A program made the position numbers and the translations under genes. 64,000 nucleotides of DNA from NCBI RefSeq assembly GCF_032062105.1, contig NW_026938254.1, forward strand, positions 248,001 through 312,000, in the 5' to 3' direction. Shown one piece after another: positions 18,895 through 28,510 of this stretch. Below the pieces are notes generated by a model. The model worked only from the letters and a program-made list of their open reading frames with translations, was not told where the DNA came from and searched no databases. The DNA comes from Saccostrea cucullata. Taxonomy: Eukaryota. The first letter of the stretch is position 1; each line of letters opens with the position of its first letter.

Positions 18895-21800
18895 TTAGTG
18901 ACCATCATTATTTGTATCGGTATCCGCGACTCCTTTTGTGAATATCAAGACTTGAGTTTTCCCATCCTTTGTCTTGACTTTGATCCTTCTCCCCATCAGT
19001 GATGGTGGCACTCTCATCCACGGCTGCAGTCCCATCTGACCATTCACTCTGCAACAAGACAATGAAAATATCCATATTTATCTTGAGCTTATAATGTGAT
19101 TATTATTTTTTTTAATTTTGTACTTATATAATGAAAAATCTCTATATGTGTAGAAATGTTAAAAAAAAGGATTGTAAAGACTTACTCAAACAATGGTTGT
19201 TCTGGTGTGCTAGGTAGCTGTGTAGAGGTGGAAGGGGCAGGGTGCACCAATCTCAAAGGAGGGTATGGGGCAACTGATGGTAAGGGTGTGTTTACAGGTG
19301 CTTCTAAAGGTGGCTGTGGCAAGTCTTGATGATTCAACAAACGTTCCTTTTCTTCTTCAGTTGGTTTTCTCAATGGAGCTTTTCTAGGTCTTACTTTTTT
19401 CTTTTCTGTAGTATGAAATCTAGGCTGTATAATATTATTGGCATTGCCTGAAATTTTCTCAGTCTCCTTGAGCTTCCCTGTGTCTTCTGAAAGGTTGATA
19501 CATGCATCATTACCAGCAGCTATTGCTTGAAATGTCTGAAGTATTGTTTGAAATCTCATTTCTCTGACCTTTGGATGTTCCAGCTGACTATCAATTTGCT
19601 GCATAAGTTTCTTTATCTGCTTATATTGAGTTTCTGGATCAACGGGGGCATTTTGGGACTGAGAAGAGTCTTGCTGTGGGTTGACAAATAGTGTCTCATT
19701 AGATTCCCCACATTCATCCCCATTTCTGTAGCTTGTACACATGCTATGTACCTTATGAATATGTTTGCATAAAAAGCCATTGTCATTGTCAGGGCAGTTG
19801 CATTTATATAAATGATAACATAAATCAATGCATGGCATTTCCTTGCATTTAACATAACAATGCTCTAAATTGCAGTACCTATTCAAAATTTCAACTATAT
19901 ATTGCCTTTCTCCTGATTCTACAATGAAGAAACTTTCAGAAATTTGCTTTATTTCCCTGTCAGTAATATGTAGACTACTTTCATGCCTCTTTTGTGTATC
20001 TGAATCCTCTTTGGAAGGTAGATTATAAGAAACTCTTTTGAAATAATTGATAAATAAGTTATTCTCCAACTTCAACAAAGTTTCCAATAGGACATCAATT
20101 CTTTTGTTTCTTTTACCCTCAAAATAAACAGTTTTCAGTTGGTTATGAAAACTTTCAATGAACATGTTTGTATCAACCTTACAGTATTCACCTTTCCTGA
20201 AACACTTTGCCCATTTCTCTGCTCTGCAAAAATAATTATCTTCCATGTATTTCAAAAAAGTTGGATTTAGTGATTGCAGTTTGGCAATAAAAGCAGATTT
20301 GTATTGAAGAAACTGGCTCTCAGATTTAGCTTCTAACATAGCACATAGAAAACTAAAGGCAATACTTTTGTGTTCATCATCTCTAAAGTAGTGTTGAACA
20401 TTGCGTGTCCATGACCTATAAATATGCCAAGTGCACAAATAATGCTGTAATTTGTCCCCAAAAGTACACCTTGCAGCATTCCATCCTGCATTGTCATCAT
20501 CTGTCATTAAGATATTGACCTGCGTTTCAGGTGACCTTGACTTAACAGAATTTAAAAACAGAGCAATGGCTGTTTCATCCTCCCTATTAGAAATGCAAAA
20601 TGCCACTGGGTAACCTTTCCTAAACTGATCTGGAACCAAAAGTGTTATCAATTTAAAGGAATAGCTATTTGTTTTATGTGTTGAATCCATGCATAATATT
20701 CTATTGGCAAACTTTTGGTAAATTTCCAGTTGCTGTTTGGTCATGAAAGCAAGCATAAAGTCCTCTTTTCTCAGACCTGGTGTTACTGACGGGTTATTAT
20801 CAATATCCTGCTGCTTGAAAATTAAAATCGGGTTAAATTTTTCTCTTTTGAGCATTTCAACTTTTAAATATGTAGAAATTGCATCATTGCTATGTTGTAT
20901 AATTGATGGATCTGCCAATTTCCTTTTTAAGTTGTGGATTGTTTTCCGATCAATTAAATTGTAATATTTGATATCCTCCAGGTTGTCTCGATTATCCCTG
21001 TCAGAAAATTTCTCTCGAATTTTGTCTAATATGTTGTTGATCGGTATTTTAAGGGACAACATACCTAATATTTCTGATTTAATACTTTCCGGAATGGACA
21101 TAAATTTGCTGTGTTCAAAGGACAAAGAATGAGTATGGGATTTTATGTACCTTACGTAGACCTTTCCATCTTCCCTTTCTCGTACAGAAAACCTTGCTGG
21201 ACAAATGCTATTCAACTGGCACTTTCCCTTTATATTTTTCTTAGAAGATTTAACTTGGTATCCCTTTTTTTTATGTGACCTTGTACAACCATTTCTGTGG
21301 CATTCAAGACAGTACACTCTTTCTTTCTTTTTGTTCTGTTGCACCTTATTCCTTAACACATAACGTGTGTTTAATGATATTTCCTCCTGTTCTTTAAATT
21401 TATTAAAATCCTCCTTAGTTTCAAAAATTAGGTTTTCTGTTAAAATATTTGCCCCATGTGCCTGAATTTCATGCTCAACTAACTGTTCTTTTGTTCTAAA
21501 TTGCAAGAAGCATGTTGATGCCATACATGGATACAAATCCTTACCTGGCTTTTTCAGAAGTTTCTGATGGTGTTTAGCCTTGTGCTTTCTAAGTGTGACA
21601 GAATTGAAAAATGAAACTTTGCATTCCGAACAAACATATTTTTTCTCTGCTAATGACTGTGCAGGCAGTTCTGGCTTGGTATAGCTATGTAGCTCTGATA
21701 TATGACCTTTACCTGGAGTTGCAGACTTTTCATTAGAATACATTCCTCTTAAACCATATTTCTCTTTACCTAAAAGTGTCACATCTGCTGGTTTGGAAAA

Positions 21801-28510: not shown

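What the first reader, a model, noticed from the sequence alone, without database searches (positions are those of the whole stretch)
18895..28510. Secreted-type micro-exon gene spliced onto an OTU protease-zinc finger-Mutator transposase exon
Seen: four to five short phase-0 exons with GT-AG sites encode MAVSSKTSICVVLNLIVLIMSLSFA-YS (a signal-peptide-like stretch) followed by an acidic region. They join in frame at acceptor 22380 to a 3.2-kb exon with an OTU catalytic set (D/C in GDGNC, H in GHYE), two C2H2 fingers and an intact MULE D-D-CxxH-E core plus SWIM. The stop codon of this ORF overlaps a perfect donor (GA|gtaagt). Known: Ulp1 or OTU cysteine proteases occur as accessory domains in some DNA transposons, and host-transposase fusions can arise by exon capture (CSB-PGBD3, SETMAR). 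Inference: this is an exon-trapped or domesticated transposase-deubiquitinase. Fusing it to a signal sequence is paradoxical for a nuclear enzyme and could mean membrane anchoring or sequestration.
Basis: partly seen in the sequence, partly recalled or inferred. Interest (0 to 1): 0.8.

Follow-up and report, generated by a model that had tools for sequence, protein, structure and literature searches.

The report
Oyster Mutator transposon with OTU-transposase gene
The supposed fusion of a secreted host gene to a transposase is the six-exon transposase gene of one 14.7-kb Mutator-like jumping gene of the hooded oyster; this kind of element is already known, though its greasy N-terminal leader is odd.

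Summary
There is an intact 1053-codon ORF (19182-22343, minus strand). Its OTU Asp/Cys/His, two C2H2 fingers, MULE D-D-CxxH-E and SWIM residues are invariant across nine relatives. Four phase-0 GT-AG micro-exons lie upstream, and a donor overlaps the stop codon and leads to a 154-nt tail exon.

Window 13890-28586 is one discrete repeat unit, a Mutator-like (MULE) DNA transposon. A second copy on contig C2965 has ~48-nt imperfect terminal inverted repeats (TIRs) and a 9-bp target-site duplication (TSD). The same termini recur at 10 or more loci with unrelated flanks. Micro-exon 1 starts about 100 nt inside the full 5' end, and five loci show the same TIR-exon 1-exon 2 layout. So the "secreted gene" is transposon-internal, not a trapped host gene.

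Paralogous subfamilies (47-55% identical) have homologous 5' micro-exons that NCBI models splice to the big exon at the same place. The tail exon is conserved family-wide in the transposase frame only.

The window copy has lost the outer ~25 nt of its 5' TIR. It gave no reads in three poly(A) RNA-seq runs, so no junction is confirmed by RNA. OTU-bearing MULEs and oyster MULEs with 48-bp TIRs are already in the literature. This is a new member of a known kind.

The parts
13890..28586 (-). Whole Mutator-like (MULE) transposon copy, 14.7 kb. The 5' end is truncated.
   Evidence: Collinear with C2965:1707209-1721942 only over this span, with nothing beyond on either side. The terminus at 13890 is shared by 6 or more copies with unrelated flanks.
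13890..13950 (+). 3'-end terminal inverted repeat, including a GCGCATGCGC palindrome.
   Evidence: One pattern match in the window against 0 expected by chance.
28559..28586 (-). Inner remnant of the 5' TIR (GCGCATGCG...CTTCCGGAGTG). The outer ~25 nt present in other copies are missing here. Likely promoter region.
   Evidence: Alignment to the intact C2965 end and to the 5' ends on C22703, C11286 and C4245.
28463..28510 (-). Exon 1: 16 codons, starting MAVSSKTS and then hydrophobic. Phase 0, GTAAGT donor.
   Evidence: Conserved next to the TIR in 4 other copies.
27117..27197 (-). Exon 2: 27 codons. It ends the hydrophobic stretch (..SLSFA|YS) and begins the acidic region.
   Evidence: Present with its splice sites in 4 other copies.
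25955..26038 (-). Exon 3: 28 codons, acidic.
24561..24608 (-). Exon 4: 16 codons (IDNMVLEEIVPEDMTD).
   Evidence: A homologous exon (IDNVVLEEVELDMQE) lies 4.2 kb upstream of the big exon of paralog C6287. The NCBI Saccostrea echinata model P0015 joins the equivalent exon to the big exon.
19186..22379 (-). Main exon: 12 codons upstream of ATG 22343, plus the 1053-codon OTU / 2xC2H2 / WRKY-like finger / MULE DDE / SWIM body.
   Evidence: Homology to paralogs runs upstream of the ATG as far as the acceptor.
21909..22271 (-). OTU cysteine-protease domain (GDGNC 22257-22271; GGHYE 21906-21920).
20145..20693 (-). MULE catalytic core: D553 (CMDSTH), D615-617 (MTDDDN), CxxH 636-640, E730 (ESFH).
19755..19802 (-). 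SWIM-type CxC...CxH motif.
   Evidence: Read directly from the translation. Invariant in 9 homologues. Pfam's SWIM model gave no hit.
18895..19048 (-). Terminal exon. It encodes the family-wide tail (..PWMRVPPSLMGRRIKV..DGK.Q.LIFT.G) in the frame entered from GA|gtaagt.
   Evidence: The tail is present in P0002, P0003, P0004, P0005, P0008 and P0009 and in L034. All 4 differences against C2965 are synonymous in this frame.
13951..18894 (.). About 5 kb of transposon-internal sequence 3' of the gene. No ORF over 110 aa; it contains a ~160-nt duplicated block.
   Evidence: Its content was not resolved.

Best explanation
Window 13890-28586 is one copy of a 14.7-kb Mutator-like (MULE) cut-and-paste DNA transposon of the oyster Saccostrea cucullata. 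Its single gene has six exons. Four 5' micro-exons encode a hydrophobic, then acidic, leader. A 3.2-kb exon encodes an OTUD1-like OTU protease, two C2H2 fingers, a WRKY/GCM1-like finger, the MULE DDE core and SWIM. A 154-nt exon encodes a conserved tail. Transcription most likely starts in or next to the 5' TIR, where both TIRs carry a GCGCATGCGC palindrome. Shown here: the element boundaries, the TIRs, a 9-bp TSD in the sister copy, dispersed copies, conservation of exons and splice sites, homologous leader exons in paralogous subfamilies, and invariant catalytic residues. Inferred: that the leader exons really are spliced to the main exon (about 0.7). Also inferred: that the protein works as a transposase whose OTU domain acts on ubiquitin-like modifiers or processes the protein itself, and that the window copy is now immobile in cis because its 5' TIR is truncated.
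For: The genome is identified through P0002, which sits on a contig of 1,736,658 bases, the length of C2965. Collinearity with C2965 is confined to 13890-28586. The C2965 copy has ~48-nt imperfect TIRs and the 9-bp direct repeat CTTGTTTTG on both sides. The 3'-type terminus recurs on C15847, C2521, C23106, C10477 and others. The 5'-type terminus recurs on C22703, C11286 and C4245. All have unrelated flanks. Exon 1 follows the TIR in every 5' end, and exon 2 with its splice sites is present in all. The NCBI model P0004 of a 47%-identical paralog has three phase-0 micro-exons (17, 13 and 13 codons). They are spliced to a homologous acceptor and sit behind GCGCATGCGC motifs. An exon-4 homologue lies upstream of paralog C6287 and is joined to the main exon in the S. 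echinata model P0015. In subfamily C contigs from other runs the frame opens right after a conserved polypyrimidine-TAG acceptor, and in L041 there is no ATG before the OTU domain. The tail exon is conserved across genera. dN/dS is 0.15 against C2965 and 0.10 against a 71%-identical homologue. Catalytic residues are invariant. The literature records a MULE with an OTU domain (MuDR-6_HM) and oyster 'MULE-Cg' with 48-bp TIRs (PMC6446971). [quoted passage not shown]
Against: No RNA read supports any junction: three oligo-dT runs gave zero depth on all exons laid. One contig from a metatranscriptome run reads unspliced through acceptor 22380 (22012-22469). However, 23 of its run's 31 listed variants match the C2965-type copy, and it may be DNA. 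A search for transcript-derived proteins carrying a leader found none. The window copy lacks the outer 5' TIR and shows no TSD. A TSD was shown for one copy only. Two termini on C11286 lie 10.8 kb apart but do not share a TSD. ORF-bearing copies are few: the window, C2965 (frameshifted) and C17855 (partial).
Confidence: 0.85

Rival explanations
1. The micro-exons are transposon-internal but are not part of the transposase protein. Translation starts at ATG 22343, from a transcript starting in intron 4 or with the micro-exons acting as an untranslated or upstream-ORF leader. The hydrophobic start would then be a by-product of T-rich sequence.
For: An in-frame ATG with a full OTU domain follows the acceptor. 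The 71% homologue P0001 has its own ATG there. A contig reads unspliced through the acceptor. Window versus C2965 over the four micro-exons shows 8 replacement and 4 silent changes, which is weak constraint. No leader-bearing transcript-derived proteins were found.
Against: The frame is open and homologous to paralogs from the acceptor onward. L041 has no ATG between the acceptor and the OTU domain. All four exons keep phase 0 and their splice sites across copies. NCBI models join leader exons to the main exon in two paralogs.
Confidence: 0.17
2. One reading: a host secreted-protein gene captured a transposase exon, or the transposase was domesticated. This would give a host-transposon chimera comparable to SETMAR or CSB-PGBD3.
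For: The window copy has an intact ORF but a truncated TIR, so it cannot be excised through its own ends. dN/dS is well below 1. Intact paralogs persist across oyster genera.
Against: Exon 1 lies about 100 nt inside the TIR of complete copies, and the TIR-exon 1-exon 2 layout moves with the element to 5 or more loci. A 9-bp TSD is present. Leader exons are ancestral in diverged subfamilies. No expression was seen.
Confidence: 0.05
3. Exons 1-4 splice past the transposase exon to 19048 in phase 0, giving a small acidic secreted peptide.
For: Both frames of 18895-19048 are open, and the phase-0 reading ends at a stop after 46 codons.
Against: All 4 differences from C2965 in this exon are silent in the transposase-tail frame, and 3 of 4 are replacements in the other frame. 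In the homologue L034 the alternative frame has a stop two codons in. No joint from 24561 to 19048 was seen.
Confidence: 0.03

Closest known systems
MuDR-6_HM (Hydra) and 'MULE-Cg' / 'MULE-Mollusca' groups of Dupeyron et al. 2019 (PMC6446971)
   Same: All are Mutator-superfamily elements. MuDR-6_HM is listed with an 'Ovarian Tumour' extra domain. MULE-Cg of Crassostrea is listed with 48-bp TIRs, the length found here. The 9-bp TSD is typical of the superfamily.
   Different: Those entries list one ORF. Here the gene has six exons with a hydrophobic and acidic leader spread over 6 kb, and the element is 14.7 kb. No direct sequence comparison with the Repbase entries was possible.
Animal MULE transposases with two classic zinc fingers N-terminal to a WRKY-GCM1 domain (Babu et al. 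2006, PMC1702500)
   Same: Same order of parts: 2xC2H2, a C...C...HxH finger, the MULE core, then SWIM.
   Different: An N-terminal OTU domain and a conserved C-terminal tail are added here. The protease fusion that paper mentions is C-terminal and in a plant (Medicago).
Ginger1 transposons and Helentrons carrying OTU; plant and Hydra MULEs carrying Ulp1 (Bao et al. 2010, PMC2836005)
   Same: A DNA-transposon transposase fused to a ubiquitin-like-specific cysteine protease. The proposed role is in transposition or DNA-repair signalling.
   Different: The transposase superfamily differs (Ginger, Helitron) or the protease clan member differs (Ulp1).
Domesticated MULE genes (ZSWIM1/3, FAR1/FHY3, MUSTANG)
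   Same: MULE core plus SWIM. Pfam's ZSWIM1-3 RNaseH-like model matches.
   Different: Domesticated genes have lost TIRs and TSDs and are syntenic host genes. This family still has both, with dispersed copies.

Membership tests
Mutator-like element (MULE) DNA transposon | MULE-type DDE transposase domain with the D, D, CxxH and E residues | tested here: met
   PF10551 E 3e-11. D553, D615-617, C637/H640 and E730 are invariant in 9 homologues.
Mutator-like element (MULE) DNA transposon | Terminal inverted repeats | tested here: met
   About 48-nt imperfect TIRs in the C2965 copy. In the window the 3' TIR is intact and the 5' TIR lacks its outer ~25 nt.
Mutator-like element (MULE) DNA transposon | Target-site duplication of 8-11 bp | tested here: met
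   9-bp CTTGTTTTG on both sides of the C2965 copy. Not found for the window copy, and only one copy could be tested.
Mutator-like element (MULE) DNA transposon | Several copies sharing exact termini but with unrelated flanks | tested here: met
   12 terminus matches, all beginning at the same nucleotide and with different flanks.
OTU deubiquitinase / cysteine protease | OTU fold with catalytic Asp-Cys-His | tested here: met
   PF02338 E 2e-13. OTUD1 (4bop) E 1e-19 with DGNCL and GHY aligned. The residues are invariant. Enzyme activity was not tested.
Domesticated (exapted) transposase gene | Loss of TIRs/TSD, a single syntenic orthologue per species, and host-like expression | tested here: not met
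   The family has TIRs and a TSD. No expression was seen in 3 RNA-seq runs. Synteny in other oysters could not be tested.
Secretory signal peptide | n-region, uncharged h-region of 7-15 residues, and small residues at -3/-1 of a cleavage site | not testable with these tools
   By eye the pattern is K in the n-region, an h-region ICVVLNLIVLIMSL spanning exons 1 and 2, then SFA|YS. No SignalP or DeepTMHMM was available. Paralog leaders are hydrophobic, but P0004's contains E and D.

The most novel reading that the evidence does not exclude
The hydrophobic N-terminal leader is a selected feature shared by several OTU-MULE subfamilies (A: MAVSSKTSICVVLNLI + VLIMSLSFA; C: MASRTDAGIFTEMFFLL; D: MILLVIFCV). 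It would tether or route the newly made transposase to the ER or nuclear-envelope membrane. The element's own OTU protease, or signal peptidase, would then release it. That would be a built-in post-translational brake on transposition not described for any eukaryotic DNA transposon.
Probability: 0.1. Interest if true: 0.65.

Novelty: new member of a known kind. Interest (0 to 1): 0.3.

Why it matters
It removes a false lead: this is not a host-transposase chimera or a secreted deubiquitinase. It also gives a well-delimited, nearly intact example of an OTU-carrying Mutator element in a bivalve, with termini, TSD, promoter-like TIR motif and full exon structure. That helps repeat annotation of oyster genomes, where NCBI currently calls these loci 'uncharacterized protein'. 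The conserved hydrophobic leader and the conserved C-terminal tail are small open questions about how such transposases are regulated.

Tried and rejected
1) My first hypothesis was that the transposase ORF is an intronic insertion in a small secreted host gene whose last exon is 19048-18910 in phase 0. I rejected it. The tail frame is the conserved one, and the micro-exons lie inside the TIRs.

2) I considered that C2965 and C17855 are haplotigs. I rejected this for C2965, because collinearity stops exactly at the element's ends.

3) An inverted-repeat search limited to 16000-25000 found no TIRs, because the element is much larger than that range.

4) RNA evidence: one read-laying run on 18800-24700 (5,901 letters, per the operators' limit) gave no exon coverage and no relevant joints. 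The only depth was on nested dispersed repeats at 22346-24118. Junctions 28463/27197, 27117/26038 and 25955/24608 lay outside the stretch.

5) A search for leader-bearing transcript-derived proteins using P0004 residues 1-130 returned only the query and leaderless relatives.

6) Pfam on the tail exon and the C-terminal 234 residues gave nothing. The WRKY-like region gave only sub-threshold C2H2 hits.

7) No 3' boundary or TIR was found for subfamily D within the sequence fetched.

All exon work was done exon by exon, by reference.

Full report
**What is in the sequence**

The minus strand of 19182-22343 carries an uninterrupted 1053-codon ORF. Pfam finds an OTU cysteine-protease domain (residues 25-145) and a MULE transposase domain (549-643). 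It also finds the related ZSWIM1-3 RNaseH-like model and a sub-threshold C2H2 finger.

The OTU part aligns best to human OTUD1 (PDB 4bop, E 1e-19), with the DGNCL and GHY motifs in register. I aligned the ORF with eight relatives down to 37% identity. The following residues are invariant:
- the OTU Asp/Cys/His;
- both C2H2 sets;
- a further C...C...HxH finger of the WRKY/GCM1 type;
- the MULE D, DDD, CxxH and E;
- the SWIM CxC...CxH.

Upstream there are four whole-codon exons with AG/GT borders: 28463-28510, 27117-27197, 25955-26038 and 24561-24608. The frame is open from the acceptor at 22380/22379 into the ORF. The ORF's stop overlaps a GTAAGT donor (19186/19185), and an acceptor at 19049/19048 opens a 154-nt last exon.

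**Which genome**

A 98%-identical NCBI protein (P0002) sits on a contig of 1,736,658 bases, the length of contig C2965 of this assembly. It is labelled Saccostrea cucullata.

**The tail exon belongs to the transposase**

NCBI models and assembled proteins of relatives all end with the same motif..PSW.RIPPSL.GRRI.V..DGK.Q..IFT.G. The relatives are P0002, P0003 and P0004, Ostrea edulis P0008, and P0005 and P0009. That motif is the reading of 19047-18898 entered from GA|gtaagt.

In a 71%-identical homologue from another run (L034) the same stop-overlapping donor, a short intron and the same tail are present. The alternative frame there has a stop two codons in. Window and C2965 differ at four positions in this exon. 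All four are silent in the tail frame, and three are replacements in the other frame.

**The turning point: the whole region is one transposon**

Comparing the full window with 50 kb around the C2965 copy shows collinearity only over 13890-28586, matching C2965:1707209-1721942. There is nothing beyond on either side.

The two ends of the C2965 copy are inverted repeats of about 48 nt. They read TCTC(G/A)GGGACGGGT.AGATTCA.TCCGGAA...GCGCATGCGC. They are flanked on both sides by the same 9 bases, CTTGTTTTG. A 9-bp target-site duplication is the Mutator hallmark.

A search of the assembly with 120 nt from the low-coordinate end found 12 matches. All begin at the same nucleotide (window 13890) and all have unrelated flanks. 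The 3'-type ends are on C15847, C2521, C23106, C2965 and C10477, plus two diverged ones. The 5'-type ends are on C22703, C2965, C11286 and C4245.

In every 5' end, exon 1 (MAVSSKTSIC.VLNL.) follows about 100 nt inside the terminus. Exon 2 follows with intact splice sites. The micro-exons therefore travel with the element. They are not a host gene.

In the window copy the outer ~25 nt of the 5' TIR are absent. Homology stops at 28586, and no remnant exists anywhere in the window. A Gypsy LTR retrotransposon (LTRs 28647-29100 and 36857-37276) starts 60 nt further on. No TSD can be found for this copy.

**Are the leader exons part of the protein?**

Three kinds of comparative evidence say yes.

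(i) In paralogs the long frame opens directly after an acceptor-like polypyrimidine-TAG at the homologous place, and homology to the window runs upstream of ATG 22343 as far as that site. In contigs of subfamily C from other runs the acceptor and the first residues (ISD..) are conserved. One of them (L041) has no ATG before the OTU domain, so an upstream coding exon is required.

(ii) The NCBI model P0004 is from a 47%-identical paralog on C4330. It has three phase-0 micro-exons of 17, 13 and 13 codons spread over 6.4 kb and joined to that acceptor. Its exon 1 (MASRTDAGIFTEMFFLL) sits behind three GCGCATGCGC motifs, like the window's exon 1.

(iii) Paralog C6287 (55% identical) has an exon IDNVVLEEVELDMQE with CAG/GT borders 4.2 kb upstream of its main exon. 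This is clearly homologous to window exon 4. The S. echinata model P0015 joins the equivalent exon to the main exon.

Three copies of a fourth subfamily (C9521, C6598, C151) share a sharp 5' boundary. It lies 40 nt before a GCGCATGCGC motif and 100 nt before an ATG that opens a 9-codon hydrophobic exon, MILLVIFCV|gt.

A hydrophobic first exon behind a palindrome-bearing end is therefore ancestral to the family. The joined model itself was not built or searched. All of this was done exon by exon.

**RNA**

Three oligo-dT RNA-seq runs of the species (1.6-1.9 billion letters read from each) gave zero depth on the ORF, on exon 4 and on the tail exon. They gave no relevant joints. Only nested dispersed repeats in 22346-24118 were covered. 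The locus is silent in those samples, so no junction is confirmed or refuted.

Contigs from a metatranscriptome run cover the ORF. One reads unspliced through the acceptor (22012-22469). However, 23 of that run's 31 listed variants are those of the C2965-type copy, and the material may be DNA. I put the splicing of leader to body at about 0.7.

**Selection and state of the copies**

dN/dS is 0.15 between window and C2965 (dS 0.078) and 0.10 against L034. This is as expected for lineages that stayed active. C2965 carries frame-breaking 1-nt indels, for instance at codon 372, which explains NCBI's N-terminally truncated model P0002.

The segment 18697-22691 is 96% identical between the two copies, while the introns are 80-89% identical. 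That hints at recombination or conversion between copies.

The window copy has the only fully open gene of its subfamily seen here, but a damaged end. It could supply transposase in trans but probably cannot move itself.

**Comparison with what is known**

Dupeyron et al. 2019 (PMC6446971) list a Hydra MULE (MuDR-6_HM) with an 'Ovarian Tumour' domain and a Crassostrea group 'MULE-Cg' with 48-bp TIRs. Babu et al. 2006 (PMC1702500) describe animal MULE transposases with two classic fingers before the WRKY-GCM1 domain, and a protease fusion in Medicago. Bao et al. 2010 (PMC2836005) document OTU in Ginger1 and Helitron elements and Ulp1 in MULEs, and suggest a role of ubiquitin-like deconjugation in transposition.

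The element here is thus a new member of a known kind. Its less usual traits are its size (14.7 kb), a six-exon gene with a 6-kb leader region, the hydrophobic N-terminus and the conserved tail.

**Verdict**

Interest is modest at 0.3. The residual novelty lies in whether the conserved hydrophobic leader regulates the transposase.

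Noticed in passing
window 28647-37276: Gypsy-type LTR retrotransposon with ~430-450-nt LTRs (28647-29100 and 36857-37276, 98-99% alike) and gag-pol ORFs from 29388. It starts 60 nt beyond the truncated 5' end of the MULE.
   Followed up: partly
window 26184-26264 (-): tRNA-like sequence (Rfam RF00005, 34 bits) inside intron 2 of the transposase gene. 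Probably the head of a tRNA-derived SINE.
   Followed up: no
window 23046-23211: Near-perfect ~165-nt palindrome (two nested arm pairs, 92% complementary) in intron 4. It looks like a MITE.
   Followed up: no
window 22346-24118: Nested dispersed repeats in intron 4 are heavily covered in RNA-seq, with reads running on into unrelated sequence. So many copies elsewhere are transcribed while the transposase exons are silent.
   Followed up: partly
window 40453-41228: Tandem array with 37/46-nt spacing, 16 registers of a 213-nt reference.
   Followed up: no
window 57927-59079 and C2965:1729636-1731619: Satellite-like tandem repeat, about 166-nt offsets, 88-93% alike between the two contigs. It is unrelated to the MULE.
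   Followed up: no
window 18697-22691 vs C2965: The ORF-containing segment, including its non-coding flanks, is 96% identical between the two MULE copies. The introns are 80-89% identical and dS is only 0.078. This suggests recombination or gene conversion between copies.
   Followed up: partly
C9521:~68085 (L037), C6598:~96178 (L038), C151 (L040): Three copies of a diverged OTU-MULE subfamily share an exact 5' boundary just upstream of a GCGCATGCGC motif, but no TIR partner was found within 14 kb downstream. C9521 also carries a 5.8-kb insertion 3' of the gene.
   Followed up: partly
C11286:25696-25754 and 36512-36559 (L055, L059): Two MULE termini in inverted orientation 10.8 kb apart, without a matching 9-bp TSD. 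Both flanks share a TACTATTTTT stretch, and exon 1 of this copy has a premature stop.
   Followed up: no
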